Source: Caecitellus pseudoparvulus
Taxonomy: Eukaryota > Protista > Bigyra: Bicosoecida
Length of the DNA: 21,345 nucleotides
Assembly (NCBI GenBank): GCA_965644315.1
Contig: CBFFRQ010000195.1
Span: 1 to 21,345 of the forward strand
Reading direction: 5' to 3'
Shown here piece by piece: positions 1-21,345 of the stretch; within the stretch, counting starts at the first letter, position 1; the number at the start of each line of letters is the position of its first letter. Position numbers and translations under genes: made by a program. The notes below the pieces were generated by a model. It had not been told where the DNA came from. It was given only the letters and a program-made list of their open reading frames with translations, and searched no databases.

Positions 1-3000
1 CGAACACGGCAACCTGCAGCAACATCTCAGGCTGCGTTTCATAGTCAAACGCGGCAGAGTTGTTCACAACAACCTCAGTTCCATTGACCTCGACAGCCCA
101 GCCTGGGTTGTTCTCCAGTGGGATTGACAGCACCGCAGTGTCACTGTCCAGGTCCACGGCCGTAATATTGGCTAGTACAGTTCCCTTTGGAGGATGCTCC
201 GGAAGGGCCTGCGCCTCCTCACAGAGCGGGACCTTGAACATGGAGAATGCGCCGCGTTGGGCAATGGGGTCATGCACCCGAATGTCTTGAAATGCAGTTC
301 GCCCGAAACAGTCACCGTGGAAGGAGGCTTGAGGGTACACGTTTGGCCCAGTTCCAGCAAAGTACGTCGCTGCAACACAGTTGAATCCTGAGGCCTCTTG
401 GCATGCTTCTTCACAATCCTCGCGTGTGAAAGTGCTGGATCCAGTGGTCAAGTCAAAGATGGCAGTTTCGAAGCCAGAAGCAACCTCGCTGCTGCCAGAC
501 ACGAACCCTTGAACCGCGTTTGTGTCCTCCTCCAGGACGAAGTCAGTTTGCCCTTGCAGGGTGCAGATGAAAAACGGCGGATCATTTTCGTCGATAAGGT
601 TGATGGTCACATTGATTTGCCCGGTTTCGAGGGCTCCATCGGAGGCAATGACATGCAACACGACGCTTGGCGTGGTCTCATAGTCTAGCGCAGACACGAC
701 GGTGACTGCACCATTCTCACCGATGACGTCGAACCAGCCGAGTTCGTTACCATCCAAAATTGTGTACGACACAGAGTCCCCTTCATCTGGGTCAGAAGCG
801 TTGAGATGCCCCACGACGGTGCCAAGGGGTGCTAGCTCTGAAACATTGAACGACTGCAGGAGGGAGGCAGTCGGCGGCTCTTGCACGTCTGTGAGAGCAA
901 CCGCAACCTCCCGAGTCATGTTTATGGCGGCACTGGGGCCATCAGGCCCTCCAGAGTCTGTTACTGTGACGTTGAAGGAAATCAACGGCGTGGCTTCGTA
1001 GTCTAGTGAAGTCAGGCCCGACACACTCAGGTCCACTTCCACTGCCCCGTTGGGCTGAACGACGAAAGGAACGGTGCCAACAGAGTCAGGGTGCATAGCA
1101 AAGGTAAGCAATCCCGCGTCGTCAGCGTCCTCGTCCCTGACGCATGGCCTCCCATTTGCACAGTTGGTCAGAGGGGAGCTGGTGGGTGTGCTTGTGCCCG
1201 AGTTCTCAGGAACCGAGAGCACGATTGCGTCAAAGAATGGCGGATCGTTCTTGTCGATTACCCCTACCGTCACAAAGCCCGTCTTTGCATGGTTGGGAAA
1301 GTTGGTCTCAATGAGTTCGAGATCTTGCACGCGGATCTGAAGGTTCCTCCCCTTGCCGGTCGGCAGGACACTCGGCAGGTCTGGGTCTTCAAAGCTCAGC
1401 GCAAACCTGGTCCGGTTGACGCAGCCATCGGGGCAGACGAAGCCAGTGTCCTCACGACCAGAGCCGTCACCCCAGTCAATTGAGTCATCAGAGATGTACA
1501 AGGCATATCGGTTCCGCCCATGCACCGGGTCCTGGGAGTGGAAGCGGATGGTGAAGTTATGGAACGGATCCCCTCGCAGCACTGAGAAGAAGAGCTCATC
1601 ATTGTCCTCATCATCGACACCAAGCAGCCCAACCAGCTCACCCGCCTTTGAGTTTTCCTCAACCAAGACCGTGTTTGCCTCCAAAGAGGGTGGGTCGTTC
1701 CTATCCGTGATATGCACCGTGGCCCATGACTCATCCCAAGTCATGGGAGAGCCGTCATCCTCAACTCGGATGGTGAGGTTGTAGAAGTTCTGCTCCTCAA
1801 AGTTCAAGATGCTCTGGTTCACGCGCACCTGTCCCGAACAAGCGTTGATGGAGAAGGCGCCGTCATCATTGCCACCCACGATGGAGTAGAACGTTGTCTG
1901 GTCCAGGTCTTGATCGAAAGAGGGCACAGCTTCATCCGTCTCTGTTGGGTCAGCAGCAGAGAGGATGATGTTTTCAGGGGTATTCTCAGGAATGGTGAGG
2001 TTTTTCGGGTACACATGCACCTGGTCATTGCGGTTCAGGACGTCGATTTCCACGACAGCAAGGTTGCTGAAAAGGCCATCAGTGACAGCCACGCCAAGGA
2101 CGAAGTACGGGGTGGCTTCGTAATTCACAGCCATGCCATTGGCAACGCAAATATCTGCTGTGGAGTTGATGCTCCACGCCCCCTCCACATTGCCTGAGAT
2201 GATGCTGTACGAGAGAGTGTCCCCAAAGTCGTCGTCCGCAGCGACCAGTTTTCCCAAGCAGAAGCCATTCGAGGCGTTGCGCTCTGAGATATCTTCTGCG
2301 ATGGTGAACTTGGCATTCTCGACGATGGGCGGCTCTTGCACGTCAGAGATGTGCACTGTCATCTCCGCTGAATCTTGAGATGTTGATGGGGCAGACCACG
2401 ATTGAACCTGCACAGGCGAAAAAGTCTGTGATCCCGTGCCTGCCTCACCGCCCCAGCCGTCAGCAACACGCCAGGCGACGTGGTTGGTGCTGCGCCACTG
2501 ACTTCGAGTTCTATCGGGGGAAGGGCCCCAGCCACGAACACCATGCCGGTTGAAGGCCCAGGATATGCCAGAGTACCTGCTCCAGTACGTGTAGGCTAAA
2601 TGTCCATGCATGCCAACCAGTGGCGCCCGACACATGAAGCCAGCACGAGGGCCAATGGTGGCAAATGCGATGTGCCTTGCTGGTGGTCGGGGCTTTGGCA
2701 TGGCGACCTCGTGCTCATGATACATGTCAGCGAACTGGGCAAAAGCCATGCTATCTGGGTCGGTCATGTAGTCTGGGGCTTCATGCACTGCATCTGCCCA
2801 TGCCTGGACACGCACAGAAGAGTAGCGGGAAGACTGGCGATTGACCTTCGGGTATCCAGCAGGAATGTGAATGGAGTGGCCCCGCCGTGCGAGGGACTCG
2901 CTCCCTCTTGCATCCGGAGCGAGAAGCCGCACTTCGCGCTCACTGTAGTAGCTCACGATCCCTCCATACTCCCCGTAGTGGCGATACTTCTGGCCGTCAC

Positions 3001-6000
3001 CCTTTGCTTCAAAGATGAACCCAGCGTTTGGGCCATCGTCCGCCCGCACCATAGTCTTCACGCGAGAAGGCATTGAGTTTAACCCGTGCAGCAGGAAGTA
3101 AAATGACGCTCTGTGCTCCTGAGCATTCAACGTAAACCAGCTGGAATCAAAGTCAGGGGCGGACGCTTCCGTCACAATCACGCGAACTTCAACATCGTTG
3201 CTAAACTGGACGTTTTTCTCAGTCTCAAGCTCTGCACTGCCTTGCTTGTACACTGCACCAGATCCCACCCCCAGGTTGATGATCGCGCCCTTCCCAAAGT
3301 ACGAGAGAGACGGAGCCCACAGGCGCAGGTGGGTCCGGCTGTAGCCAGACACCATGCCACCCCAGTACGACCACGTGGTGTACTCGGCCCAAGAAGCTGC
3401 TCCCATGGTGGTGAAGATGTACCCTTGATTTGGCCCGTCAGCGACCCGAAGCTGCACCTGCACATCCAACTTGGATGGGTCCTTAGTCCGGAAAACTGCC
3501 TTGAGTTCTTCAGGAAACTCCACTTCTCTGTAGCAGTCATCAGTCGACGGGAACATGGGGTTGTCTGGACACATGCCAATCATCGTGAACCACCCAGAGT
3601 CCCACTTACTTGTACCAGCACTCACAGCGAATCTGTGCGTGCGCTTTGCCTCGAAGTCGAGTACATCTCGGCGCACAGCCAGGGTACCATCCTCAGGGAA
3701 GGCCATGAACGCACGGTCTCGAAGCGGTGATGAGGCGCCATGGCTCAGCGCAGCCTGCTGCTCTGCCTTTTCAAGCCCAGAGATGCGAAAGTCTGTGACA
3801 GTGGCGCCGGTTGTAGCGCTGGCAAAGACTGGGATGGGCAAGATGCTGCCAGGGGCCGAGTTTTCTGGGATTGTCACTGACTGCTGGGTGCAGCCGAGCA
3901 CTGTCCGGGCGACAGCATGGCCATCGCCTGGGCCTGGAAGGGATGAGGCTGGCAACTGCCCAACGGGAAGAGTGTCCATGTCAAACGTGATGTTTGGCTT
4001 GCGCACTTCAATGTTGGCAATCTCAGCAGAGGTTCTCCAGCCCGTCCCATACAAGGTGCCTACCGCACTGGCGTTTGAGTAGCTCGTCACTCGCCTCCCA
4101 ATGGCGGCGTATGACGCACCATACCCGAATCGCGCCGCAGGCTGGACGCCAACACCAGACGAGCTGATGATGGGCAAAGGGGGCATGGACAGTGACAGCA
4201 AGGCTGAGTTGAGCTTCTGAGCGTTCAATGGCTTGCGGCGGTACACTCGCAAGTGCCTGAACTGGGAGTACGCAGAAAATGCTGTGAAGAAGCCAATTGT
4301 TCCCTTTGTGTTCGCGCTCGTCGGATCAGTCCAGTTGTTCACCAAGCGGTCGTTGAGGTACGCCGCAAAGTGGTTGCCGTACACGTCAACCCTCACGTTC
4401 ATCCACTCCCTTGTCCCAGCGTGCAGGTCATCATCCCGCCACCTTCGGTTCCCAGTCACGCTCGTGTTCAGAACACGCTCGTCGTCGGGCCCAGAGTGTG
4501 ACGTGAACGCAGTGCAGCGCTCGTGCACGTATGGGCTGAACATGAACTTGTAGTGATGGTCCTCGTCAGTCCACCTGAAAACGATTCCGTTCTGCCGTGC
4601 GTAGGCGTAAACCCACACCTCCACGGTGTAATCGGTCCAATCATAAGCAGCGGGAATGTCTAGCAGAGCAATTGTACCACGCAGCCGGTGGCTGCATGCT
4701 GCAGAGCAGGTGCTGGGCGTCGAGAAGCAGTTGTATGGAGGGCTTCTTGGGTATGCGTAGTAGTACGAACGGGGTTGCAGACCCTGCGTGTTGAACTGCC
4801 ATGTGACTGCTGTGTTTGACATTCGCCAAGGGGCAGTGTTGGTGGGGTACTCGTTCACAATTTTGAAGTGTGAAGCAGGCCCATTTCGACCACAGCAAGA
4901 AACCCCCGACCGAGGAGGAGCCTGAGTCCAAGTCGGGTAGTCTTGGCGGTCGTGATCAAAGACCAAGGCGTGCTCAGACACCCAGGCATATGATCGGCAC
5001 CGGCGTTCATGAAACTGAGTCCCCACAGATACCCACAGGTTGGGCTCATCTGCCACGGGCATCCACCCCTCACCGCTCACGTACCCTGTCATTACCGACG
5101 AGGTCCACTGCTTCCCTGATGGGACGTCGTTGTGCAGGCACACGTCTTCCCAACGGCAAAGGCGCTGTCCCATGTGTCGTTCACAGAAGTCCTTTGCCCC
5201 CTCCCAGGTCTTGTTCGCGGCTGGGTACGGGTTCGAATCCATTGCCTGAACGCTGTATGTCACTTCACGGTTCATGTCTAAAATATCATCATTCGTTGAC
5301 CGTGTGAAGAAGATCGACCGCAAGCCCATGATGCGGGAAACCCAGTTGACGCGGAAGTCATCCATGTAAATGGTAGGCTGGGGCGCGTCCACCGGCCACG
5401 CCAAAGCAGCTGCGAGAGAGGAATTGACTGGAACTTCAGCCTCGTCCATAAGGAAGTCTGCCGCTGCGTCGATTTCGGCCTGAGCAACGTCACTGTCCGG
5501 GTTTGTAATGTCAAATGTGGTTGGCGTGCCGGAGAGAAGGGTCCCAGTGCTGCTATACCTCCAGAAGCTCAAGCCGGTGGCGGCGGCGTCATACTGCACC
5601 CCGTTGTGCACAAGCCGCGCAAGACTGTGAGCAGGCTGCCCCGCAACCTCAACCAGTGGGTCGTTGGCATGGTCAACCACAGTTCTGTGAAAGCGACTGG
5701 CAAAGACACCCCTGCCCTTGGGTTCGGCGAAGACCGCGACCTCATCCACCACCACGCTGTTTTCGAGAGGATGCCCGCCTGGCGAAAACTCGCCATCAAA
5801 TCCAACTCGCAGTGGGTTGTCAGCGTAGACTGGCACCCCCACGTTCCTTCGAAAGACGTTGCCGTTGTGAGAGACAGTGTCAAATGGAGGCTCTTGTCCG
5901 TCCACGTACAGGAATGCACGCCCTGTGATGGCCTGCCACTCTGCCGCAATGAAGTGCTGCCCGATGGAAATGGGCTCATCAGTTGTGATCCAATTTGCCC

Positions 6001-8974
6001 CGAGATCGGTGTTGATGCCGAATCGCAGCCTGAGATCCGAGCCAAGCTCAAAACGGAACGTCCACGATCCAGGCCCGGCTCGGTCGGACACAAGTGGCGA
6101 CCACAGCGTGGGCGAGGTGGAGGCATTCCCGTAGGCTGGGCCAGCGACGCGCACCCAAAACTCAACAGAAAAACCAAGTGTATCAGGGACCTTGCCAGGT
6201 GGCATGCTGGGGCCTTGCACATACTCAGATGCAACGTCGCCTTCCCAGGCGCCGTCAGCGTCGTACGCTTGGTTCGTTGCGAAAGGGGCCGCGGAGCCGC
6301 CGACGGCCATGCCGTCAACACCCGTCGTCTGCTCAGTCACAAACCCTGCCCCGAGGCGCATGTACGTGTGCGGCATATCGGCCAGCACGTGCATGGCGTA
6401 GCTGGCGCCGCCCACAGACACCACTGTCGTCTCGGGGCAAGGCGTGAGCGTGTCAATGGTGAGGAGGTGCACCTCATCCACGAAGGCCTCTGCGGCATCG
6501 TCGCTGGGCACGGCCGCGGCCATGAACCTCACACTCGCAGCAGGGTTGAACGGCTCAGTACCTGGCCCTGCTCCATCGAAATCTTGGCGATACTTGCTCG
6601 CGAACTTGGACCAAATGTGCAGCATCACAGTTTCCCACGTCGCCTCGGGCACATCCCGGGTCTCGTCACAGTGCATGGCTTCTGTGGAGCCAGAGCTGAA
6701 ACAGATGGAGAAGAAGCGCCGGGAGTTACACAGCGCCCTGCCAGTGCAGTCCCATGGCTGGGGTGCTGGGCCTCCCAGGTCCTCGAACACGGCCACCCAC
6801 AGCGGCATTCCCCAGCGTCGTGGCACAGCCGCCGCCTGAGCGGCAAATCTAAGGTATGTGGAAGAAGTGACTGGCCCCGTCAATACAGAGGACGCGAAAG
6901 AGTGGAACTGGGATGGGCTGTTCAGGTACGTGTCTCGGCTCTGCGGGAGACTGGGGCTGACAGGCAGGTTGTACATCTCTGCGAAGTACCTGTGCACGTC
7001 TGCGATTTCATCCTCCGACAGCGTTCTGTTGTACATGATGAACTCTGAGATTTCTCCGGAGGCCTTGTTGGCATGACTTACTCCAGGCATGTCGGAGAAC
7101 GCAATCCGGCCGGGGTCTATGTAGGACTGTGTCCATCTGTTGTCACCCACAAGTTTGCCATTTTGGTAGGCCTTGTTGTACTTGCCAGGGCCGGCTGAGC
7201 CGATGAGAAGGTACCACTTGAAGGAAGACGAGAGCTCTCGCCCGTAGGAGTGTGTCTGGGCTGTGGAATCTCGCATGGTCACATACCCAATATTGGGCAA
7301 GTAAACCCCATGGTAACCAGAATTGGGGCCAATGAAAAATGTGCTATAGTCCCTGGAGTGCATCAGGCGCCCACCTGGCACGGTGTGGTGGCGAAAGAGC
7401 AAGACCACTGTGTATGGAAACTCCAATCGGACAGAGTCACTTTCGAATTGCAGAGCCTGGCCCGTCTCCGCCACATCAAACCGGATGGCAGGGGAGTTCA
7501 GGTCAGTTTCATCAGCAGGGGCCAGCGTGGGGCCCAGGCGAGCACCTATGGGGGGGACGATCATGTCGTGGCCATGGCCAGACTGGTCAGCCCATCGAGT
7601 GACGTGGTCCCCCGCCAGGGTCACACCTTTGCTTGCTTGCAGCCAGACGAAACGCCCATCGGCCGGGAGTGTGTCTTCAGATACCGGGGCGAGCATTGGA
7701 GGCTGGTACAGGCGCACACCCCGCTGCCCATCATAGCGAGCATTGGAGGACACTGAGCTGTCTGCACCCGGCCGTGGACCTGCGTCGAAAGACCAGGTAG
7801 CTGCGGCAGTCGCGGGGTCATCCAGGCGTTCAAAGTCCAGAGTGGTGCCCAGGATGCACAAGTCAGTGCCTCCGGGGCTGCCCTGAAAACACAGGTATCC
7901 CGGCTCGGTGGTGCATGCCGCAGAGCAGCCGTCCCCGTTTGCAGCGTTGCCATCATCACAACCTTCAAATGCGCCGCGCTTTCCGTCGCCACATACAGAC
8001 TTTGAGGCTTGGGTGAGCTCAACAATGCAGGCGTCCTTGAGAAAGGCGCAGTTCACAGTGCCTTGCCGCCCGCTGTGACCAGAAGTGTCTTGTACACTCC
8101 ATCCGTTGGAACTGGCTTCAAACTCGAACTGCACCTCCAGCCCCGAGGTGCCAGGAGGCAGGCCGCCCTGCATGCCGGCGCGGATGTCGTTGTCGGAGCG
8201 AGCCACGCTCCAGATGCGAACTTCATCCAACAGGCCTGACATGCCTGTCTGTGGAATGATGGGGTGCCCGCCCCACAAGTGCAGCTTGCGTTGGGTCAGC
8301 GGGGGCTGGGGCAGCCCAGAGCCGGCAGCCTGCACGACACCATCCAGGAGGATCCTTGCCCTGCCATCCCCGGCTTCATATACGACAGCAATATGAGTCC
8401 ACAAGTTCCTGGGCACACGCCTGCTTGTCGCCACACAGTCGATGCCATCAGAAGTTGGGCTGCTGCGGATGCAGAACTCAAGTTTCCGCTGCAGGTCGAT
8501 CCCAAGGGCAACTGCGGGCGAAAGGGAAGGCAAATGTGACTGCACTGGCCACGAATCACACCTGCTGTCTTCACCAAGACTTCTCGGTGCGCGCAACGAA
8601 GGGGAGAAGCGGAAGAAGCGGAAGCAACGTCCCACTTCCCGACGCCAGCACGCTGGGATGCCGTTCACGCACGGTACTGAGCGAATTCATCGCCAAGGTG
8701 CCACAACGTCGTCCTTGGAGAGTCGTGTTTGAGGAAGAACCACCCTGTGGCCAACAGTGGGGTGAGTGGTGCCGGTGTCTTGCGGCGTGCGCAGGGCAGG
8801 CTGAGGTCGCTCACCCTCCACGGTGAAGGAGGCGCCTCCGAAGCTGAACGGAGCACCCGACAACGTTGAGAACTCCTCCTGCTCATGCTCATAGTCTAAT
8901 ACGAGCACTTTCTGCTGAGCAGCGACTGACGCTGCCAAGCAGGCCAATGCCAAGCACGTAAACACGCCTCGCAT
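1..8974 (-). CDS. Gene A: giant secreted/surface cadherin-repeat protein with LamG, Cys-rich, lectin-like and PAN-like domains; 3 exons join(8974-8815, 8744-8673, 8511-<1); 3'-partial, >2,900 aa
   Basis: GCAGCC-ATG start and signal peptide MRGVFTCLALACLAASVAA. Two GT-AG introns restore the LamG motif FTVEGWFFL...WTHIAVVY...LLDG...LDEVRIWSVARS. The frame is open from 8509 to 1 by manual translation, and no ORF-track entry falls in this frame there. Cadherin Ca-binding motifs (PEN, DxD, LDYE/LNFE, DxNDxP) recur from ~3880 to 1. Confidence 0.93.
221..565 (-). other. Gene A PAN/apple-like domain
   Basis: TREDCEEACQEASGFNCVAATYF...DCFG (CxxxC-x7-C...C pattern). Confidence 0.65.
2395..3604 (-). 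repeat. Gene A three tandem protein-level repeats (~125-150 aa) of an unnamed module inside cadherin repeat 1
   Basis: WDSGWF..DGPNQGYIF..WGGM..LRLWAP; FDSSWF..HGL..DGPNAGFIF..YGGI..VRLLAP; GPRAGF..YSGI..VRGWGP..DGWG. Confidence 0.8.
4892..5209 (-). other. Gene A small Cys/Trp-rich domain, C-type-lectin/Link-fold-like
   Basis: TWEGAKDFCERHMGQRLCRWEDVC...WMPVADEPNLWVSVG...SCC; counterpart in gene B at 15434-15724. Confidence 0.55.
5685..6400 (-). other. Gene A third LamG-like domain
   Basis: YAMHVLADMPHTYMRLG, FSVEFWVR, FLYVDG, VVDEVAVF. Confidence 0.75.
6965..7660 (-). other. Gene A second LamG-like domain
   Basis: VWLQASKGV..VTRWADQSGHGHD...GEISEFIMYNRTLSEDEIADVHRYFAEMYNL. Confidence 0.75.
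7856..7993 (-). other. Gene A Myxococcus-type Cys-rich repeat (DUF4215-like)
   Basis: CGDGKRGAFEGCDDGNAANGDGCSAACTTEPGYLC. Confidence 0.85.
8512..8672 (-). other. Gene A intron 2 (161 nt, phase 1)
   Basis: GTGCGT donor with an in-frame TGA just inside; pyrimidine tract CCTTCCCTTTCGCCCGCAG acceptor; joins to the long open frame (QY-L-ALGID). Confidence 0.82.
8745..8814 (-). other. Gene A intron 1 (70 nt, phase 1)
   Basis: GTGAGC donor and CCACAG acceptor; removal yields FTVE-G-WFFLK (LamG motif). Confidence 0.88.
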
Positions 8975-9407
8975 GGCTGCCCACAGTGAAACGCCGCCTG
9001 CCGTCGACGCCTGACGTGGGGTGTTGACCGCGTGCTCTGCTCGTTTCTGGAGCCACTGATGGAGGTAGGGAATGAAACAACTCCCATGATTGGTCTGGTG
9101 GCCCTTTTTGCGTGTACATGGGTGCTGTGCCACGTTGCAGGGGAGGGACGTGTGGCTCGGCAAGGAGGGCACCTTCCGTGAACTGTCGAAGTTGCCCTTG
9201 CACTTGGCAGTAGAGACCGCTGTTCATACTCAATCCCGACTAAGACAACCGGCAGTGAGGTTACTTCGCACCACTAAGTTGCTCCTCGCTGAACAAGGCT
9301 CCCACAGCAGTTCCGGCGAGAGGGCCGCGAAGCTGCAAAGAGGAGGAGCACCAACGCGCTCGGCCCGCGCTTTGCTGCGCCATCCTTCTCACTCAGCTCA
9401 GAGAACC
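8975..9407. promoter_or_regulatory. Probable bidirectional promoter plus both 5'UTRs (433 bp between divergent ATGs)
   Basis: Lies between two divergent starts. Contains ATTGG (CCAAT on - strand) at 9089-9093, TGACGT at 9013-9018 and initiator-like TCATTCC (- strand, 9075-9069). These short motifs are weak evidence on their own. Confidence 0.6.
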
Positions 9408-12400: not shown

Positions 12401-15400
12401 TTCCCGTTCGGGAGGCGCACAGTGAGCGGGTTGGACATCAACTCCACGAGCATTTTCTCCTTTTCGGTGCGAGTTCGGCGCGAGCCATTTTACATGGGAG
12501 TGCCGCTGTGGGTGCTCCTTGCGGATGACGGCCTGGCGAGTGTCCCGCCAAACCACCCCTGCTTCACAGCGAACGAGCAGTGCGATGCGATTCAAGCATC
12601 CAGCAACCCAGGGCACCGCAAGTTTGTCCGCATTTGTGTGAATGGTGCTCAGGAGCTCGGCTTTTGTGACGAGCTTACTTCTGCACCAGTTGATGTTTGG
12701 GCCAAGAAGTCATTCTCTGTGGCCGGCCTGTTTGAGAAGAAGTATGGCTTTGGCATCAAGCTCCCCACAGGCTTCACGATCGTCCTTGCCACAGTTGCAC
12801 CCCTACAGTCAGCAGAGGTGTTTGTTGACGACATCATGCTCTTGAACACGCGCACTGGGGAGCCAGAGCGCGCATGCCCCCCCCTGACATCCATTTCGCG
12901 GGGTGGAACTTCGCGTTCGGTGACTCTGACCGACCCCGCCTCCACTGCATTCACGAATTGGACCATCCATGCTGCGCCAGCAGGAGGTGTTTCCGCAGCG
13001 CACACTGTTTATGGCAGCCACAGCGTTCTGGAGTTTTCAGGCACAGTGAACAGCAGTATTGACATTGCCCCCGACGTTCGCGGCATCATGACAGGCGACC
13101 CCCGAGTGGCTGCTTTGGCGGAGTCCGAACAGCGATACTCCAGAGAGTACTACATGAAGTTCTCGCTGGAGCTGGGCAGCTCCACCGTCGGTTCTGCCAA
13201 GAACATCCCCTCCATCCACATGTGCTCTGACCAAGTTCGACTCGGCTACAGCTACAACGACAACGCTTGGCTGTATCACTACCGTTCTGACTCGGCTCAA
13301 CGCCCACCCTCTGAAGTGGATGAGTTCATGACGGATGACCCCGTACCATCCAGCGAGTTTGCGAATGACGTGGTCAGAATGTGGGACGAGCCCCGAGTTG
13401 AGGCATGGCACCCGGAGGGCTACTCATACGCCTTCTGGATCAAAGTCGAAGAGCATTCACCCTCTTGGGGCTCAGTCTTTTTCCGAGGCTGTGCCAACCC
13501 CGGGTACACCGAGCTGGACCTGTACAACGTGTTCGGAGTCAGAGACCGGCAGCCGGCAGTGTACATGCGCTCGCGCACTTCCAGATTGTACGTTGCCAAA
13601 GCCCATGAATACTACTGGAGCAACAATTGTGAGCCGTATGAGAGCTTGCCGATTGGAAAGTGGGCTCATGTGGCCATTGTGCTTCGTTCAGGGCTGATGC
13701 AAGTGTTCTACGACGGGTTCCAAGTCTGTGCCCGCAGTTTCCAGGGGTACGACATGTTTCACCCCATCATTCTGGCTGCGGGCAACCGGACCTTCGGCTT
13801 TGGACACTGCTACCCGCCTGCTTCGAACACCCGCATGCGAGGTTTCCAGGCGTACCCCTCAACGTTGACTCTTGCTCAGATTCAAGCGCTTGCTGCCGCC
13901 AACACAGATGTCCCCCCAATTTCGGCGATGTCTGCCCCTGGTGACTCTGCAACGATCGAGTGCTATGTGTCTGAGGAATATGTGCAGGTGTACGAGAACT
14001 CTGTACTGAAGCTGAATCGTTCCCGCGTGACACCAGAGCAGGAAGTTCTGGAGACGCAGCATCTGCTTCACCATGACCAGCCCGTTCGCTTCCGCGCCAT
14101 GGCAAATGTCGGTGATTCTGTCGAGTTCACGGTATCGAATGTGAGCATTGTGGAAAGCCGCGAGGATCTGCGCACGCCTCGCTACTGCTCAGCCAGTGGC
14201 CACATGTACCAGGTTGTGTACCAGCCGGAGGTGTCTTTCCAAGAAGCTCGCCTAGAGGCCTCGAAGAAGCGGTTCAATGGAGCCCAGGGGCGTTTAGCGG
14301 CCATTTCCAGCCAAGCTGAGCTTGACTGCATCACTGCCATGACTGCTTGTGAGCGTGTGTGGATTTCTGGCGTGTGGAATGCGGGCTTGGCCCGCTGGGA
14401 GACCCAAGATGGAGATGCGAAGGCAATTGAACCGCTGACATTCCTCCCATGGGCAGCGAATCGAAACCCATCCGGAACCACCGGCTTTCTTCAGCTCCAC
14501 CCTGGGAAGTGTGACGCCGCCAGCTCCACCCGGCTCGGAACCGTTGGAGAGTGTCAAAATTCTTGCCCGAATCATGTGCGCGGGTATGTCGTCGAGTTCC
14601 CAAGCCCCGTCGAGCAAGGCCGAGATTTGCTGAATGCCTCAACTCCCCTGGTCTCTAGCTCGTCTTTTTCGCCGTCTGAGGCTTCACCAACACAAGCTAT
14701 CGCGAGGGCACATGTCACGGGCTCCCGGTCGCCGGACAGCACTTCTGGCTGGACTTTCTCAGTGGGAAGTGGGCAATCTGCACAGGAGCTGGTATTTGAT
14801 CTTGGGGTAGAGCAACTTGTGTCCAGAGTGGGCATGAAGTTTGACCTGGCTGACTCAACGCCTGGCGAGTCGGCTCGGGTAGAACATGGTGCGAGCGCTG
14901 GCGGCCCATGGACCTTGTTCTCCCACCTGGCAGTTGCAGGGGAGGGAGACATCATCCGGGAACAGGTTTTTGCTGTCAAGCAGCCACCAGTCATCGCCCG
15001 GTTTTGGAGGTTTGTCGTCGGCCCCCATGCCGACCCGGGCAACACGAACGCGGTTCGGCTGCGAGGCGTCTTTGCCCAAGACTTTGGCAGCACTTTCGGC
15101 AAGCTGCTGGTAGATGGCGCCGCTCAGGAACCCGTCGAAGTTGACGACGCAACGTTCTCCGGATTGAAGGTGGTCGTGGTTGACCAGGAGGAGGCTGTGG
15201 TCAAAGCTCGTCGCGCCTTCCCCATGCACGGCCCTGGGCACGCTGAAGCACTTGCTGCATTCTTGGACACTGTGGCAGTCGGAGACTCTGTGATGCTTGC
15301 AGCGCACAACATGAAGCCGCTGCGGGAACTGGCCTTCATGGACAACTTTGTGACACGGTACAGACTTGACTCGCTACGGCGCTCGGCCATCCATGCACCT

Positions 15401-18400
15401 GCGCTTGGCTTCTTCCAACATCATCCAAACTCGACTTGGGAGAATGCCAGGGAAGTTTGCATTCAGCAAAAGGCACAATTGTGCGATAAGGACATTGTGT
15501 GCACGCCTCGATGGAGTAGCTATCTTGGGGGCCTGCTGCTCTTCGACGGGCGATCCAGACAAGGTCGCGCGTACATGGCTGTGTCGGGCCGCGATAACTG
15601 GATCGCGATCGGGCGTAGCCATCCAGCCAGAGATACATGCCGTTATTTCGAGGACGTGGAGACCACCGAAACCAATGACGACACGTTTTTCAGCACGTAC
15701 CCGCACACTTACGCCATGTGCTGTAAGTCGCACGAGCCAGAGCTGGGAGTGAACTGGGTTGAGCACCGCGTTGGCGTCAATGCTCTGTACCCGGGAATGT
15801 TTTACATGAACAACGGCCGCCTCTACGCGCATGGGTATCCTTTCGCTCACCCTAACTTTCCGGGGCGCAACGTTCACACTGAAGACAACGCAAACTTCCT
15901 CTCAAGAGGAGCGGCGCCTCAGGATTGGGGAGGGCACCACGCCTACTACGCGGACCCGCTGGCGATGACTTCTTGGAGCGACTTTCGGTACAACGCTTGG
16001 GTGTACATCAACGGATGGCATGCTGGTCTGACATTCAGGGTTGCTTCTCAGAACACTTACTACCGAGTGTTTGCTCACCTTAGCCCGGCGAGTCGGGCAC
16101 GGGTTTGCTTGTACCGGGTGGTGAATGGAACGTCCAGCCCTTGTTTGGAGTACAAAGATAGCAATGACATGACAATGCCACCCTACCGCCAGTGGTCGGC
16201 GTGGGAGATCACAGCGCAAGGAAGGCACATTGTCGTGACCATCGCTGGCTTGAAGTACGTGGACTTCTGGGACACTTCCCCAGATGCAATTTTTAGTGGC
16301 TCTGTGGGTGTGTATCAGTGGTATGGCCATGGTACCCACTTTGATCATGTGAGCGTGGAGCGATATGCCCGGGTAAACGACACGGTGCTGGCGCAAGCTT
16401 TCGCCACCATCGGGATCAACGGACTGGCAGGGCTACAGGCTGCCGGTGGGCCCGTTGGAGACGCTGTGTCCTCTGGCCGAGCGGCAGGCACGACAGTGTC
16501 TTGGTCAGCCATTGGTATGAAGCGGGACACTTCCATGAACCTCACAGCAGCCTCGCACATCAGTGCTTCTGTTCAGCGAGCGTCGTCAGGGGAAATGGCC
16601 AAGGCGGAGTCCCTCTTCACTTGCAGGGACCAGAATGTAAGCATGACGGAGAACTCTCGGGAGTTCACGGAAGCAAACGTGCCCTTGTCCCTGCAGCCAG
16701 GAGCAAGAGTGGGGGGCTTCTATGTCGTTGGTGCCACAGGCAGCGCGCCATTTGGTGTGGACTCTGCGACAGGCAGTCTTGTCGTGCAAAACCAAGACGC
16801 GCTGAACTTCGAGCAGACCGCAAGCTTCCATGTGCAGGTTGCCGCCGAGAGGGCGCTGTACGACAGTGGGTGGCTCCGCTTCGGGTCACAGGCGGGAAGA
16901 CTGTCGTTTGCCGAGATTCGGCACCACGTCGACTTAGACCCAGCTTCAATGAGGGTGGATGTGCTTGTCAGAGCCGTGGACGGCCCGAACAAGGGTTTCA
17001 TCATGCACGGTACGCCTAACATTTTTGTGAGTGATGTCTCCTTCCTGTTCAAGTACGGTGGCGTGCACTTCGGGTGGGGTAGGGAAAGCGTGCGGTTGTG
17101 GGCTCCATCCTTCTACACTGGCTATGCAGCAGGTTTCGCGTGGCACACTGGACAGGGGTGGGGTGGCAAGTACACTGGTGGTGCAGTGACTGAGGAGGCC
17201 TGGCAGCAAGACTCGCACCTGGTGGACGTCAAACTCGTTGTAGCACCCATCATCCCGCCCAGCTTCGACTCTGGCTGGTTCACGGCATTCGCACACAAAG
17301 GCAGGGGCTCCACACAAGTAGTCTGGCATGGCTGCAAGGGGCTGCCGGGACATGTGCGAGTGCTTGCCAAGTTCACAAGTGGCTGGAATGAGGACTTTGT
17401 CTTTGAGGCTGTTGGGTCTGCGCAAGCAGACAGCTCTGCAACCCTCTTCCATCATGGCGCAGTGGTGTTTGCGTACGACAAAGACATGGTGCGCATTCAC
17501 CTTCCCACAACGCGACTCGAGACGGGGAGTGCGTTGATGACGGGCAGTGGTTGGGCCGGCAACGCCATGCCTTCAAAAGCCAACATTGTGGCTGTTCGTG
17601 TGCAAGCATGGGAGGACACCGACGCCGCAGACCCGCCAACTGCAGTGGCAGACCCCTTCAACCTCCACTCATTCTCATTGGCTCACGCTGAAGTGGAACA
17701 CGGCGTTGGCGTTGTGCCTGGCAAAGTCCAGCTGCTGGCCGCCTTGGACAGTGGCATTGCCTCTGGCTTCCGCTTTGACATGCGGGGGACCACTCCCCAG
17801 CAAAATGGCTACTACTCAGGCATCAACTACGGAGGCGTGGCCTATGCATACAATGAGACGCACACCCGCATGTGGGCTCCCTCGCGGCGCATGGATCGAC
17901 CCCAGAGCTACGCACCGCAGCGAGTTGTGTGGGCCGCGCATGGCTGGGGAGTGGAAGCTGAAGCAGGTGAGATGGTCGCCACGATGTACATGAAGACTTG
18001 GGCCACCCAAGCTTCTTCCGTTGACGTTATTAACACGAACGTGAAGCTACTGGATGTTGCTGAGCCGCCTCGCATGCGCGGTCGCTTTCACGTCTTGGAC
18101 GAGAACCTTGCACTCGGCACGGTCGTCGCCGACCTAGAGGTAGAAGATGGAGACTGTGCAAGGTTTGTGGACTGCAACATTACCTTTTCCATTGTTTCTG
18201 GCAACGTAGGCGGCGTGTTCGGTGTCAACGCCTCGAGTGGCGAAGTGTTTGTGCAAGACCCCACCTTCCTCAACTTCGAGTACCTGAGGGAGCTGCAGCG
18301 CAACCGCACTGAGGACCCCACTGTCGCGACGGCTTTCATTGCCGCTGGTGTCCAAGCCAGTGATGGGCGGCTTGTTTCGCTGGCAATGCCCAGTTTTCAG

Positions 18401-21345
18401 GTCCGCGACATCAACGACTACCCTGTCTTGGAAGAGGACCCGGTGCGCTACATTCTGGAGGAGTCTGCTGTAAATACCAAGGTTGGTGCACCAATTGAAG
18501 GTTCTGACGAAGATGACGGCCAGCTCATGCTTTATTCCATAATCGATGGCAACACCGACGGCACCTTTTCGATCGGCGCGTGCTCTGGCCAGTTCAGGGT
18601 GCGGAAGCCGCCGGACTACGAAACGCAGCAAGATTTCAACATCACCATCATGGCATTGGATGATGGCACGCCGCCGTACAATGTGACACGGGTTGTCCGC
18701 ATTCACATCATCAACAAGAACGACCCACCCGAGCTGCAAGTGCAAGACGCTTATGTGTATGAGAATGGCCTCGTCGGGCAGCCGCTCACCCTTTGGCCAT
18801 TGAACGGAACTGACCAGGATCAAGACGACTTGGAGTGGTCCATCATCATTGGAGATCCGAACGACCAGTTTGACGTCATTTCTCAGCCAACAGTGGGCAG
18901 TCGCTCCACGGCTCATTTGACCGTGACGAAGCCCGGCCTGCTTGACTTTGAAGACCCCGCCTTGAATTCCTTCGCCATTCTTGCGATGGTGAATGACACC
19001 GAATTCCAGGCCACGGCATTGGTCAACGTGCATGTGCTGGATGCTAACGACCCACCGCTTGTCCCTGCTGCGCAAGGGTTGAGCATCGTTGAAAACTCGC
19101 CGGCAGGGGCTGTGATTGGAACCCTCTCTGCCTTCGACGAAGACGGCGACACGCTCACGTTTGGTGTTTCAGCGACATACCCTGCTGAGATCTTGTCTTG
19201 GGTCGAAGTGGGTGCAGTGTCTGGACAAGTCACCGTCTCTGCCGCTGGGGGAGGGCAGCTTGACTTCGAAGCAAGTCCCAGCTTCGCCATGCAAGTGTGG
19301 GTACAGGATGATGGCGGGCGAGGCAACGCTTTCCCAGCCGCAACAACACTTGTGAATGTCACAGTGCATGTTCAAAACGTCAACGAAGCACCGGCGTGGA
19401 ATGACTCGAGCGCGGCAGGAACGTTCCTTCTGCCAGAGAACTCCCCTGTCGACTCGGTCGTAGCCTCCATCGGGTACTTTGATGAGGATGTTGCCGCGCT
19501 GCCTCTAGACCAGCAGGGCTTGACCATCACGATCGAAGCGGGAAACCAGAACGGGTTGAGCGGCGGCGGATCAGGAGGTCAGCTTGCCGTGTACTCGGCG
19601 CTGGCGGGTGCTGGAGGAAGTAGCTCAGCTCTTGGCGCTCCGTTCAAGCTTGTGCCTACGCTTGTGGAAGAGGTCGTGCCAGACCCTAACGTCCCCAATG
19701 CCACCATGACGGTCTCCTCCACAGTTGCCGAGCTTCGGGTGGCACATGACGTCATTGATTTTGAGTCCCGCAGCGAGTTCAGCCTGACTCTTCGTGTGGA
19801 GGATGACGACTCGGAGGCACCCCTTCACGATATTGTTGAGGTGTCTGTTAATGTCACAGACCGCAATGACCGCCCGCTGTTCAGATGCAACAGTTCCGCT
19901 TTTACGACATGGGCTACGCCATGGGTCATGCATGGGGGCTGGGGATACGAGCCCAGCGGTGGCTTTGACCTCGGAACGACGCCAGACCGCACCTTTCCCA
20001 TGCCTGGGGCAGAGGCCCCGGTCAGTGTCAGGTTTGGCTCCCCGCTTCCTTCAGACCGGCTGTACGCAGAGCAATGCGAGGCGGAGTGTGCGGGCCTCGC
20101 AGATTGCAGAGGCTTCCTTTACTTTGCATCCACACACAACGGCGGTGGTTCTCCTTTCGCACGCACTTGCTACTTTGACATGCGGAGTGTGTACAGCGTC
20201 CCAGTATACGTCCCCAGCCAGGTAGGCGCAACGTATGGTGGCAGCAAGATGTTCCCTTGCAATCGAGTGCAGCTTAGCGAGCACACGCCGGCAGGCACGC
20301 TGATTGGGCTGCTTCAAGCAACTGACGACGAGGGCGACATGATTTCCCTGGCTCTGCCAGCATCCAACCCGAACGATGGCATTTTGAGGGGTGTCAGCGC
20401 CGTTGGCGTGCAGCCACGGGTTACTTTTGAAGAGACCATCGATGCTTCCTACGTCGAGCCCAACATCACGTTTGATGTCAACACAAACATGACAGTGACA
20501 GGGCCGGGCACATTCGTCGAGTACCTGTATAACGTCACTGTCTCACAATGGACGTTCGAGGTGCTCGATGAACAGGCTTTGAACTTCGAAGGCCAACCAG
20601 TCTCTGAGCCGTGGATTTGGCTGCAAGCCTCGGCCATCGATGAAGCTGGCAGCAACCAGAGTCGGTCGGTGTGGTTTGCTGTGGAGCTCATCGACGAGAA
20701 TGACCAGCCTGTGTGGAGTCCGACTGAATCGTTCTATCGGGCTGTTGCTGAGGCATCTCCCGCCGGGACGGGGATCGGCCTCCCACTCGGGGCGTCAGAT
20801 GAAGATTCCGGGGACTCCATTAGCTTCCACGTGCTGTCTTCTTCGAATCCCCGACTCTCCGTGAGTACCAGTGGCCAAGTATTTGTCGAAAGTACCCTCC
20901 CGACTGTCGCCTCGTCTGAAAACCACACCCTTCACGTGCTGGTCAACGATACCCGTGGCGCAAGCATTGAGGCCACAGTTACTGTCACCATTTCAAACCT
21001 GAACTCAGCGCCCCAGCTGACAAACCCTCTGGCTGTGCGGGCAGTCCCAGAGCTGGCCGCCGTCGGGACTTTGGTGCCTGTGGACTTGATAGGATCTGAC
21101 GTCGACAATGACGACATCGTCTTCCAAGCAGTTGTCATGACGCCAAGCTTAGAGAGAGCACTAGCCCTCCAATCTTTAAGTGCCACCTCTGCAAGGCTTG
21201 AAGTGAACACCTCAACTCTCAATTTCGAGTTCACACCACAACTGGAGGTGGCTGTTTTCCTCACAGACTCACCTGCGAACCCGGCAGATGCTCTGACTGT
21301 GCAGTACACTGTATTCGTTGACATTGATCCTGTGAATGAGTACCC
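9408..21345 (+). CDS. Gene B: giant secreted/surface cadherin-repeat protein, paralog of gene A; 4 exons join(9408-9575, 9654-9698, 9907-9978, 10070->21345); 3'-partial, >3,800 aa
   Basis: AACC-ATG-G start and signal peptide MVSSKSWKTLLLSCAVALICLAGSAFG. Three phase-0 GT-AG introns give FTVE|AWVFL..FGD|SVMMDFG..GES|RPRLRLC. Frame +2 is open from 10070 to the window end. Nine cadherin repeats with linkers DVAEPP, DINDYP, NKNDPP, DANDPP, NVNEAP, DRNDRP, DENDQP, NLNSAP, DPVNEY. Confidence 0.93.
9576..9653 (+). other. Gene B intron 1 (78 nt, phase 0)
   Basis: GTGTGT donor, in-frame TAA inside, C-rich tract ending CCCAG; yields FTVE-AWVFL. Confidence 0.88.
9699..9906 (+). other. Gene B intron 2 (208 nt, phase 0)
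   Basis: Consensus GTAAGT donor; pyrimidine-rich stretch ending CCACAG. Confidence 0.82.
9979..10069 (+). other. Gene B intron 3 (91 nt, phase 0)
   Basis: GTGCGT donor; CTTCACCCGCACTTCGCAG acceptor; places the reading frame in the long open frame. The spliced product ITIGLLGESRPRLRLCI aligns with gene A LALGIDLQRKLEFCI. Confidence 0.75.
10595..10735 (+). other. Gene B Myxococcus-type Cys-rich repeat (DUF4215-like)
   Basis: CGDGVRSGAEGCDDGNAEGGDGCSGVCSVELGWVC. Confidence 0.85.
10925..11467 (+). other. Gene B-specific CBM/galactose-binding-like jelly-roll insert
   Basis: ETYRVSAYL...WQYVHLDIT...GRVFATDLQI, flanked by Cys at both ends; absent from gene A. Confidence 0.55.
11485..12210 (+). 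other. Gene B second LamG-like domain
   Basis: MWMKADAGL...VDLW...GQIGEIVMYRRVLSNAERQNVELYLAHKWG. Confidence 0.78.
13380..13900 (+). other. Gene B third LamG-like domain
   Basis: YSYAFWIKV, LPIGKWAHVAIV, MQVFYDG, YPSTLTLAQIQAL. Confidence 0.78.
14183..14599 (+). other. Gene B C-type lectin-like domain
   Basis: SGHMYQVV..SFQEARLEA..GRLAAISSQAE..VWISG..FLPWA..GYVVEF. Confidence 0.78.
14625..15085 (+). other. Gene B F5/8 type C (discoidin/CBM32)-like domain
   Basis: SGWTF..QELVFDLGVEQLVSRV..GPWT..IARFWRFVV. Confidence 0.65.
15434..15724 (+). other. Gene B small Cys/Trp-rich domain, C-type-lectin/Link-fold-like
   Basis: TWENAREVCIQQKAQLCDKDIVC...DNWIAIG...C...AMCC. Confidence 0.55.
16859..18001 (+). 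repeat. Gene B three tandem protein-level repeats (~125-135 aa) of an unnamed module inside cadherin repeat 1
   Basis: YDSGWL..DGPNKGFI..YGGV..VRLWAP..GWGG; FDSGWF..HG..FVFEAVG..HGAVVFAYD..GWAG; EHGVG..YGGVAYAYN..RMWAP..GWG. Confidence 0.82.
19886..20260 (+). other. Gene B PAN/apple-like domain
   Basis: AEQCEAECAGLADCRGFLYF...TCYF; same position (after cadherin 6) as in gene A. Confidence 0.7.

What the first reader, a model, noticed from the sequence alone, without database searches (positions are those of the whole stretch)
1..21345. Head-to-head pair of giant, colinear, deeply diverged cadherin-lectin paralogs: candidate two-subunit protist adhesion or prey-recognition system
Seen: two divergent genes 433 bp apart encode the same ordered series of modules (LamG, CGDG repeat, split jelly-roll, LamG, split ILEI-like, split cadherin with triple insert, 5 cadherins, PAN-like, cadherins), yet identity is visible only at motif level, so the duplication looks old. 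Established: cadherin repeats form Ca-rigidified stalks, and divergent paralog pairs such as the collagen IV alpha-chain genes are co-transcribed and co-assemble. Inference: A and B are co-regulated and may form a heteromeric surface filament bearing a glycan-binding head, for example for substrate attachment or bacterial capture. I do not recognise this architecture among described metazoan or choanoflagellate cadherin families.
Basis: partly seen in the sequence, partly recalled or inferred. Interest (0 to 1): 0.85.

Follow-up and report, generated by a model that had tools for sequence, protein, structure and literature searches.

The report
Paired giant lectin-cadherin surface receptor genes
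Two huge, anciently duplicated genes for sugar-binding, cadherin-stalked membrane receptors sit back to back in a marine protist; three lineages keep this arrangement, so the two probably work together, but no test of that could be run.

Summary
The window is a whole 21-kb orphan contig of a 30.6-Mb protist genome. It carries the 5' halves of two divergently transcribed genes whose ATGs lie 433 bp apart. Each has a signal peptide, two or three small introns and one giant exon. The two proteins are colinear at about 25% identity (E 2e-103).

Both run LamG, DUF4215, LamG-like, DUF7495, DUF1080, a split cadherin with three inserted modules, five cadherins, a PAN-like module, then more cadherins. 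B has about 1,200 extra head residues.

- **Full-length form.** Two complete copies of the same pair elsewhere in the genome (C20, C68) are 6,066-6,583 aa. They continue into 11-13 IPT/TIG repeats, DUF7630, a nine-helix membrane module weakly like fungal TRP/Flc (PF06011) and a conserved tail. These are multi-pass receptors, not a secreted filament.
- **Pairing.** The head-to-head A/B unit also occurs on two metagenome contigs, at 43% and about 27% identity. Four loci of other relatives are unpaired.
- **Inserted module.** It is an undescribed domain whose fold matches the trimerisation domain of Pseudomonas pseudaminidase. It occurs singly or in threes, which suggests a single-chain pseudo-trimer.

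First readers flagged the same kind of pair on two other pieces of this genome.

The parts
8975..9407 (.). Shared 433-bp spacer between the two start codons; the putative bidirectional promoter.
   Evidence: Read. The spacer is 414 bp in C68 and C20 (345 bp if an upstream in-frame ATG of the A gene is used) and 428 bp in the metagenome relative. It is only about 30-120 bp in the distant pair L044. No conserved sequence block was found. No Rfam match.
1..8974 (-). Gene A, 5' part, about 2,914 codons. Exon model: 8974..8815, 8744..8673, 8511..<1. The 3' half is missing because the contig ends.
   Evidence: Open frame. Signal peptide and GT..AG introns (70 and 161 nt) were read by eye with frame and LamG continuity. 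No RNA support is available.
8183..8974 (-). A: signal peptide plus first LamG_3 (ConA-like) domain, interrupted by two introns.
   Evidence: Pfam PF13385, E 2.7e-14. The exon 1 ending FT(V/I)E is conserved in all copies.
7913..8011 (-). A: DUF4215 cysteine-rich (CGDG) repeat.
   Evidence: Pfam PF13948, E 8e-5, 23.3 bits against a cut-off of 27. It is the only part of the head that finds named database proteins.
5936..7264 (-). A: region with two partial LamG_3-like matches.
   Evidence: Pfam PF13385 at E 4e-4 and 1e-3, both below the cut-off. The splitting itself was not tested.
4967..5218 (-). A: DUF7495. My reading from its residue pattern is that it is C-type-lectin-like; this was not tested.
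   Evidence: Pfam PF24325, E 6.5e-12, 46 bits against a cut-off of 27.
4244..4633 (-). A: DUF1080 / 3-keto-disaccharide-hydrolase-type ConA-like jelly roll.
   Evidence: Pfam PF06439, E 1.2e-6, 29.1 bits against a cut-off of 26.8.
2312..3886 (-). A: first cadherin repeat, split by an insert of three tandem modules of about 125 aa (modules at 3520..2387). The last strand of the cadherin follows the insert.
   Evidence: Own cadherin HMM. AF2 of the 546-aa region gives pLDDT 78.8 and pTM 0.76. A single module gives pLDDT 91.6. Fold match to 3h6j/2w38 residues 329-438 with Z 11.6. No Pfam family.
578..2305 (-). A: five consecutive cadherin repeats. Three linkers in the window have the DxNDxP calcium motif.
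   Evidence: Pfam PF00028, 147.6 bits. Own HMM. Motif scan.
221..577 (-). A: PAN/apple-like cysteine module.
   Evidence: Pfam PAN_1 is faint, E 0.045. The cysteine pattern is conserved between A and B types.
2..220 (-). A: start of the next cadherin repeat, cut by the contig end.
   Evidence: Own HMM, positions 3-74 of 96.
9408..21345 (+). Gene B, 5' part, about 3,853 codons. Exon model: 9408..9575, 9654..9698, 9907..9978, 10070..>21345. The 3' part is missing because the contig ends.
   Evidence: Open frame. Signal peptide and three GT..AG introns (78, 208 and 91 nt) were read by eye. No RNA support is available.
9408..10381 (+). B: signal peptide plus first LamG_3 domain, interrupted by three introns.
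   Evidence: Pfam PF13385, E 7.7e-10.
10592..10675 (+). B: DUF4215 cysteine-rich repeat.
   Evidence: Pfam PF13948, E 2.7e-4.
13430..15307 (+). B-specific extra head modules: LamG_3, a discoidin-like module (F5/8C, weak) and an ILEI-like module (weak).
   Evidence: Pfam E 3e-6, 2.8e-4 and 2.5e-4. This region has no counterpart in A.
15422..16354 (+). B: counterpart of A's DUF7495 followed by the DUF1080 jelly roll.
   Evidence: Aligned to A. PF06439 is weak, E 0.011.
16628..18082 (+). B: split first cadherin repeat with the same three-module insert.
   Evidence: Own HMMs. Alignment to A.
18083..19873 (+). B: five cadherin repeats.
   Evidence: Pfam PF00028 and PF17803. Own HMM.
19874..20257 (+). 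B: PAN/apple-like module.
   Evidence: Pfam PAN_1, E 0.0078, below the cut-off. Alignment.
20258..21343 (+). B: three further cadherin repeats, up to the contig end.
   Evidence: Own HMM. Pfam Big_9 and Cadherin.

Best explanation
The window holds the 5' halves of two divergently transcribed, anciently duplicated genes for giant cell-surface receptors of a marine protist. By their complete paralogs they are about 6,000-6,600 aa.

Each protein has these parts, in order:
- A signal peptide.
- A head of carbohydrate-binding-type folds: several ConA-like LamG domains, the DUF4215 cysteine repeat, DUF7495 and the DUF1080 jelly roll. B adds discoidin-like, ILEI-like and one more LamG.
- A stalk of 11 cadherin repeats. 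The first carries a knob of three modules related to a bacterial trimerisation, H-lectin-like domain. This is probably a single-chain pseudo-trimer.
- A PAN-like module in mid-stalk.
- Then 11-13 IPT/TIG repeats, a cysteine-rich juxtamembrane module (DUF7630), a nine-helix membrane module distantly like fungal Flc/TRP-like proteins, and a conserved tail.

Most likely the head binds glycans on prey, substrate or other cells. The calcium-stiffened stalk holds the head far from the membrane, and the multi-pass module passes the signal inward.

The A-B unit has stayed head to head since before lineages now only 27% identical diverged, and it duplicates as a unit. I therefore infer that the two genes are expressed from one short bidirectional promoter and act together. 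They could be two receptors with different specificities or a cis complex.

Shown here: gene structure, paralogy, architecture, conserved pairing, purifying selection. Inferred: surface location, glycan binding, co-expression, joint action.
For: - Gene structure and the 433-bp spacer.
- A and B are colinear at 25% identity, E 2e-103.
- Domain calls.
- Complete paralog pairs on C20 and C68 have a nine-helix C-terminal module and a tail.
- The same head-to-head pair is on JGI contig Ga0307982_1000105, with A 42-43% and B 44-47% identical. It is also on ENA ERZ27280190 k141_1493298, at about 27% identity.
- The A and B clades have mirrored topologies, with distant members on each side.
- The window pair is 60-62% identical to the C68 pair for both genes, so the unit was duplicated whole.
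- dN/dS between the C20 and C68 copies is 0.01-0.28 over the ectodomains and membrane module, and 0.5 only in the last window of B, which covers the tail.
- The module fold matches the pseudaminidase trimerisation domain at Z 11.6 (PMC9147764). Tandem runs of the module never exceed three.
- The multi-domain model has pTM 0.76, which suggests a compact packing.
Against: - No expression data could be obtained, so co-regulation is only inferred from position.
- The intergenic DNA has no conserved block. Its length ranges from about 30-120 bp to 433 bp.
- Four loci in other relatives have A-type or B-type genes without a partner.
- The membrane modules of A and B are no closer to each other than to other family members.
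- All lectin-type assignments rest on fold family, and several are below Pfam cut-offs.
- The PF06011 relation is weak: 17 bits against a cut-off of 28.5, and 5 of 23 members match.
- The window's own 3' halves are absent from the assembly. Its full-length form is extrapolated from paralogs that are 60% identical.
Confidence: 0.55

Rival explanations
1. Neutral relic. The head-to-head layout is only the footprint of an old inverted duplication. A and B are independent members of a large family of giant receptors, each working alone.
For: - About 30 giant open frames in this genome share the membrane module, in various orientations.
- Four loci in relatives are unpaired.
- The intergenic DNA has no conserved motif and its spacing varies.
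- The A and B membrane modules are not specially related.
Against: - The pair persists at 25% A-B identity in three lineages.
- It was copied as a whole unit at least twice in this genome.
- Both partners stay under purifying selection.
Confidence: 0.28
2. Obligate cis heteromer, which is the reader's idea adapted to the full-length form. A and B co-assemble in one membrane through their stalks, membrane modules or tail helices. This would resemble collagen IV chain pairs or polycystin-1/2.
For: - Conserved pairing.
- Both have the same stalk plan, 1+5+PAN+5 cadherins then TIG repeats, so the heads would sit at similar heights.
- The tails share an NPxx motif followed by an amphipathic helix.
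Against: - There is no direct evidence.
- Each protein is a complete receptor on its own.
- The tail motif is family-wide, not specific to the pair.
- Unpaired relatives exist.
- B's head is about 1,200 aa longer than A's.
Confidence: 0.12
3. Trans ligand-receptor pair for cell-cell recognition (kin, mate or aggregation). This would resemble the paired tgrB1/tgrC1 genes of Dictyostelium.
For: - Paired paralogous adhesion genes with IPT/TIG repeats that duplicate as pairs, as reported for tgrBC (bioRxiv 10.1101/2025.08.01.668227).
- A 5.7-kb tract of gene conversion or identity over the B head between the C20 and C68 copies.
Against: - The recent duplicates have no hypervariable region and show dN/dS of 0.01-0.28.
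- The anchor is multi-pass, not single-pass.
- No population data are available.
Confidence: 0.05

Closest known systems
Non-metazoan 'true' cadherins of oomycetes (Pythium ultimum; PMC2926784)
   Same: Cadherin EC repeats with calcium-binding linker motifs in a protist outside animals and choanoflagellates. There is no catenin-binding domain.
   Different: Here the repeats are part of a protein of about 6,000 aa with a lectin-type head, a domain-in-domain knob, IPT/TIG repeats and a nine-helix anchor. The genes also come as a conserved divergent pair.
CELSR/Flamingo and Fat-type giant cadherins of animals
   Same: Long cadherin stalk combined with LamG domains. CELSR also has a multi-pass anchor. 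Pfam gives faint CELSR2 and FAT4 cadherin sub-family hits.
   Different: Pfam finds no EGF, GAIN/GPS or class-B 7TM domain. The anchor has nine helices and is PF06011-like. LamG sits at the tip and not near the membrane. IPT/TIG repeats are present.
Polycystin-1 / polycystin-2 and fungal Flc/Pkd2-type PF06011 proteins (PMC9600462, PMC8618638)
   Same: A giant adhesive ectodomain, including a lectin-type module and Ig-like repeats, is fused to a multi-pass TRP-like module. The idea of a receptor coupled to calcium entry follows from this.
   Different: There are no PKD, REJ, GPS or PLAT domains. Similarity to PF06011 is below Pfam's cut-off. No channel activity is known.
Dictyostelium tgrB1/tgrC1 paired recognition genes
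   Same: Adjacent paired paralogs for IPT/TIG adhesion proteins that duplicate as pairs. That they are divergently oriented is from my own knowledge.
   Different: Tgr proteins are about 900 aa, single-pass and highly polymorphic. Here the proteins are seven times larger and multi-pass, and the duplicated copies evolve under purifying selection.
Collagen IV alpha-chain gene pairs
   Same: Head-to-head paralogs on a short shared promoter.
   Different: There is no collagen or triple-helix sequence. Co-assembly is unproven here.
C-terminal trimerisation domain of Pseudomonas aeruginosa pseudaminidase (PDB 2w38, 3h6j)
   Same: The fold of the inserted module: VIA Z 11.6 with rmsd 2.9 over 105 residues, Foldseek probability 1.0, profile E 0.015.
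   Different: About 20% identity. Here there are three copies in one chain, inserted into a cadherin repeat, instead of one copy per chain of a homotrimer.

Membership tests
Cadherin superfamily (EC repeat, PF00028) | EC repeats scoring above Pfam's gathering threshold. | tested here: met
   A scores 147.6 bits and B 116.3 bits against a cut-off of 28.8. In the window, 7 repeats are found in A and 9 in B; each full-length copy has 11.
Cadherin superfamily (EC repeat, PF00028) | Calcium-binding linker motif DxNDxP between repeats. | tested here: inconclusive
   Only 3 (A) and 4 (B) linkers in the window match D.[ND][DE].P, and 3-5 of about 10 in full-length copies. Other linkers are degenerate.
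Classical cadherins | Single-pass anchor and a cytoplasmic catenin-binding domain. | tested here: not met
   The complete paralogs have about nine hydrophobic helices. Pfam finds no cadherin cytoplasmic domain in the tail.
CELSR/Flamingo adhesion GPCRs | GAIN/GPS plus a class-B 7TM domain after the cadherin and LamG domains. | tested here: not met
   A Pfam scan of the C-terminal 3,000 aa of c68A and 1,083 aa of c68B finds TIG, DUF7630 and a weak PF06011 only.
PF06011 TRP-like (fungal Flc/Pkd2-type) membrane proteins | Match to PF06011 above the gathering threshold. | tested here: inconclusive
   17.2-17.6 bits against a cut-off of 28.5. 5 of 23 family members match at E<=0.01, best 7e-5. The nearest Atlas cluster is 'TRP C-terminal domain-containing' at 0.96. 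One homolog carries PF06011.
Polycystin-1 | PKD repeats, REJ, GPS, PLAT and 11 membrane helices. | tested here: not met
   Pfam reports none of these domains.
TgrB1/TgrC1-type recognition pair | Adjacent divergent paralogs with IPT/TIG repeats. | tested here: met
   Orientation and spacer. TIG repeats in the complete copies.
TgrB1/TgrC1-type recognition pair | High polymorphism or diversifying selection, and trans heterophilic binding. | tested here: inconclusive
   Paralog comparison gives dN/dS of 0.01-0.28 with no hypervariable region. Alleles and binding cannot be tested here.
Pseudaminidase-type trimerisation domain | Shared fold over the whole domain, standing clear of other matches. | tested here: met
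   Z 11.6 against a next-best Z of 5.0. Foldseek E 5e-5 and TMq 0.62.
Pseudaminidase-type trimerisation domain | Forms a trimer, here proposed as an intramolecular pseudo-trimer. | not testable with these tools
   The evidence is indirect only. Tandem runs are 1 or 3 and never more, and the four-domain model has pTM 0.76.
Head-to-head co-regulated, co-assembling pair (collagen IV type) | Shared bidirectional promoter with correlated expression, and physical co-assembly. | not testable with these tools

The most novel reading that the evidence does not exclude
A and B are the two obligate subunits of an adhesion-gated receptor-channel. Their TRP/Flc-like nine-helix modules co-assemble, in a polycystin-1/2-like way. 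Each subunit carries a single-chain pseudo-trimeric lectin knob grafted into a cadherin repeat. The head-to-head gene unit has been kept for stoichiometric co-expression since before lineages now 27% identical diverged.
Probability: 0.12. Interest if true: 0.85.

Novelty: new variant of a known kind. Interest (0 to 1): 0.6.

Why it matters
Cadherins outside animals are barely studied. This family joins a cadherin stalk to a lectin-type head, IPT/TIG repeats and a multi-pass TRP-like anchor, and no paper or named database entry that I could find describes that design.

The deep conservation of a divergent A/B gene unit gives a concrete, testable case of two giant receptors that may need each other. 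This bears on how free-living protists sense prey, surfaces or partners.

The inserted module is an unannotated domain family of 237 cluster representatives. It appears once per chain in bacterial fibre-like proteins and three times per chain in eukaryotic giants. That would be a clean natural example of turning a homotrimer into a single-chain pseudo-trimer, placed inside another domain.

Tried and rejected
- **Bacterial origin.** I considered this because of the giant intron-less frames. I rejected it because of the signal-peptide exons with GT..AG introns splitting the LamG domain, and because the 30.6-Mb genome is eukaryotic by the earlier notes (telomeres, protist).
- **Haplotigs.** C20 and C68 are not alleles of one locus. 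Only 39 kb are shared, and the flanks differ.
- **Pseudogene in c20A.** The frame break is a cluster of about 13 one-base insertions in 300 bp, which looks like assembly error.
- **Extending the window.** The 3' halves of the window's genes are not in the assembly.
- **Promoter motif.** Aligning four spacers shows nothing conserved.
- **Short contigs.** The contigs of P0004, P0027 and P0018 were too short to show neighbours.
- **Solved structure for the membrane module.** None found.
- **Named homologs of the A head.** The only hits go through the DUF4215 repeat.
- **Organism identity.** It could not be established with the tools.
- **ncRNA and tandem repeats.** Rfam and the tandem-repeat scan of the window are empty.
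- **Spliced models.** The small 5' exons were only translated locally, exon by exon. All searches used the giant exons by reference.
Full report
**What is in the window.** The window is the whole of contig C195 (21,345 bp) of a 30.6-Mb, 215-contig eukaryotic assembly. Earlier notes of this scan call the organism a GC-rich marine protist.

Stop-to-stop scanning finds two enormous open frames. One is on the - strand, 8686..2 (2,895 codons). The other is on the + strand, 10037..21343 (3,769 codons). Both run off the contig. At 58% G+C this is far beyond chance.

Upstream of each frame lie short exons.
- Gene A starts at ATG 8974 (-) with a hydrophobic signal peptide. It has two GT..AG introns, giving exons 8974..8815, 8744..8673 and 8511..<1.
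- Gene B starts at ATG 9408 (+) with a signal peptide. It has three introns, giving exons 9408..9575, 9654..9698, 9907..9978 and 10070..>21345.

I read the introns by eye from splice consensus, reading frame and continuity of the LamG domain. I sent no joined spliced model to any search tool. The small exons were translated locally one by one, and all searches used the giant exons by reference.

In both genes the first intron falls right after the motif FT(V/I)E of the first LamG domain, within one base of the same point. The same exon 1 ending is seen in every other copy.

**Paralogy and modules.** BLASTP of A against B gives one colinear alignment of 1,838 residues at 25% identity, E 2e-103. 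Profile tiles built from three A-type proteins map in order along B over the whole length. B has about 390 extra residues at 285-672 and about 800 at 961-1796.

Pfam finds the following:
- Weaker LamG_3 matches further on.
- DUF7495 above the cut-off in A, and the DUF1080 / 3-keto-disaccharide-hydrolase jelly roll.
- About 500 residues with no Pfam family.
- Cadherin repeats well above threshold.
- A faint PAN match with a cysteine pattern conserved between A and B.
- More cadherins after that.
- In B's extra region, another LamG_3, a weak discoidin (F5/8C) match and a weak ILEI match.

A cadherin HMM built from these proteins themselves finds the pattern 1 + 5 + gap + further repeats in both. 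The first repeat matches model positions 1-86. After about 400 residues, the last strand and linker (positions 79-96) follow. With the insert removed, the match runs end to end.

I did not test the 'split jelly-roll' and 'split ILEI' claims.

**The full-length proteins.** A DNA search of the genome found two more copies. Both turned out to be complete head-to-head pairs.
- On C20, the B type is 6,581 aa. The A type is in two frames.
- On C68, the B type is 6,583 aa and the A type 6,066 aa.

The two loci share only a 39-kb block at 94-97% DNA identity, with different flanks, so this is a recent segmental duplication. The window's A and B are 62% and 60% identical to the C68 proteins. The pair was therefore also duplicated as a unit earlier.

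Beyond the point where the window ends, the complete copies continue as follows:
- More cadherins, 11 in all per protein.
- 11-13 IPT/TIG repeats.
- A cysteine-rich DUF7630 module.
- About nine hydrophobic helices.
- A lysine-rich tail of about 170 aa.

The helix module matches PF06011 (the fungal TRP-like/Flc family) only weakly. It scores 17 bits against a cut-off of 28.5, and 5 of 23 family members match with a best E of 7e-5. The nearest ESM-Atlas cluster is 'TRP C-terminal domain-containing protein' at 0.96.

All sequence homologs are unnamed marine metagenome fragments. One carries PF06011 and several carry a WW domain. PF06011 proteins are described as regulators or channels of calcium homeostasis in fungi (PMC9600462, PMC8618638; listed).

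The same membrane module ends about 30 giant open frames (2,700-8,657 codons) in this genome. The DUF7495-DUF1080 head is found only in the six A/B genes.

The 3' halves of the window's own genes are not in the assembly. C195 is thus an orphan fragment, and its full-length form is inferred from paralogs.

**Is the pairing conserved?** The only close database relative of the B head, P0001 (6,489 aa, 44% identical), lies on JGI contig Ga0307982_1000105. There, an A-type gene 42-43% identical to the A genes of this genome sits head to head with it, 428 bp between the start codons.

A more distant A-type protein, P0006 (31% identical to A), lies on ENA contig ERZ27280190 k141_1493298. It is head to head with a gene that is colinear with residues 128-2420 of B, including B's specific extra modules. 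The start codons there are only about 30-120 bp apart.

In contrast, four loci have no partner within the 6-10 kb upstream of the gene start. These are two B-type loci and one A-type locus in sample ERZ25074506, and one A-like locus in SRR23287149. Three further contigs were too short to tell.

A quick maximum-likelihood tree puts distant metagenome proteins on both the A side and the B side, with SH-aLRT of 91-99. Within each clade the order of the paired copies is mirrored. The careful search did not finish, so this is the quick tree only.

The A/B duplication is therefore old. The divergent unit has been retained in three lineages and lost or never linked in others.

**Selection.** Between the C20 and C68 copies, dN/dS is 0.01-0.28 along both genes and reaches 0.5 only in the window that covers B's tail. 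Both partners are therefore maintained. No hypervariable region of the kind expected for a Tgr-like recognition locus appears.

**The inserted module.** An exhaustive HMMER search with the split-cadherin region found 237 cluster representatives. Many are small proteins that look bacterial to me. In these, a single copy of a 125-aa module ends a chain containing tail-fibre-like repeats. None has a Pfam family.

AlphaFold2 with a 90-sequence alignment gives pLDDT 91.6 for one module. Its only clear structural relative is the C-terminal domain of Pseudomonas aeruginosa pseudaminidase:
- Foldseek probability 1.0 and TMq 0.62.
- VIA Z 11.6 against a next-best of 5.0.
- Profile E 0.015.

That domain is used as an autonomous trimerisation domain in engineered lectins (PMC9147764). 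The next matches, around Z 5, are H-type lectins and phage fibre or tailspike tips.

In the 152 proteins I held, the module occurs in tandem runs of one, two or three, and never four or more. There are 58 runs of three and 42 single C-terminal copies. Runs of two may hide a divergent or cut third copy.

The 546-aa model of cadherin plus three modules has pTM 0.76, which is high for four domains. I infer that the three modules pack as a single-chain pseudo-trimer grafted into the cadherin repeat. I could not inspect coordinates, so this stays an inference.

**How it most likely works.** Shown here: two secreted-type N-termini, heads made of carbohydrate-binding fold families, cadherin and IPT/TIG stalks, a multi-pass anchor and a conserved tail. 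The tail carries an NPxx motif followed by an amphipathic helix and is shared across the family.

Inferred: the heads bind glycans on prey, substrate or other cells. The stalk projects them far from the membrane. The nine-helix module transmits the event, possibly as ion flux.

The pair is most simply explained by selection for joint expression from a short bidirectional promoter. I put this at about 0.55. A neutral relic of an inverted duplication is the main rival, at about 0.28. An obligate cis heteromer (about 0.12) and a trans ligand-receptor pair like tgrB1/tgrC1 (about 0.05) are possible but have no direct support.

The membrane modules of A and B are no closer to each other than to other family members. 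This gives no support to a dedicated A-B channel.

**Comparison with known systems.**
- Cadherins outside animals and choanoflagellates are known from oomycetes (PMC2926784).
- Cadherin, laminin G, lectin and IPT domain genes are up-regulated in starved Cafeteria (PMC7852580). That fits a sensing or adhesion role but concerns another organism.
- The present architecture fails the tests for classical cadherins, CELSR/Flamingo and polycystin-1.
- Membership of PF06011 is inconclusive.
- I found no paper or named database entry for the architecture.

It is a new variant of the giant-cadherin adhesion-receptor kind, not a new category. First readers of this scan flagged the same kind of pair on two other pieces of this genome (s1-668493, s1-652658). 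I found those loci independently.

**Verdict.** Interest is 0.6.

Noticed in passing
window 2387-3520 (-) and 16841-18007 (+); proteins P0003-P0152: An unannotated domain family of about 125 aa (motifs DSGW, DGxNxGFIFE, YGG, VRLWAP, DGWGG). 237 cluster representatives and no Pfam family. It occurs as a single C-terminal copy in small proteins with tail-fibre-like repeats that look bacterial, and as sets of three in giant eukaryotic proteins. No tandem run exceeds three.
   Followed up: yes
G000:C20:41500-47200 against G000:C68:~874900-880600: A tract of about 5.7 kb covering the B head (aa ~150-2050) is 100% identical between the two loci, in a background of 1-5% divergence. This is either gene conversion or assembly collapse.
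   Followed up: partly
G000:C20:55490-55800: The A-type gene on C20 loses its frame through about 13 one-base insertions within 300 bp, relative to C68. It looks like a local assembly error and not a pseudogene.
   Followed up: partly
G000, about 30 loci (for example C94:54367-55548, C32:717233-719134, C32:740450-742237, C89:786392-790052): A large family of giant open frames (2,700-8,657 codons) shares the DUF7630 plus nine-helix module. Two sister genes on C32 are convergent and 21 kb apart, and two on C89 are tail to tail 2 kb apart. Head-to-head pairing is therefore specific to the A/B subfamily.
   Followed up: partly
window ends (1 and 21345): Contig C195 ends inside both genes, and the missing 3' halves are nowhere in the assembly. 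It is open whether the fragment is a third locus of the same genome or comes from a low-abundance relative.
   Followed up: partly
L017:~8920-9198 (+), L020:1-450 (-); tails of P0001, P0005, P0117: The cytoplasmic tails share an NP[LMI][LM] motif followed by an amphipathic helix across A types, B types and other family members. Some metagenome relatives add a WW domain.
   Followed up: no
window 8815/8814 (-) and 9575/9576 (+); L021, L022, L023, L044: In every A-type and B-type copy, exon 1 ends at the FT(V/I/L)E motif of the first LamG domain. In the window genes the first intron follows directly, within one base of the same point in A and B. If the other copies splice there too, the intron is older than the A/B duplication.
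   Followed up: partly
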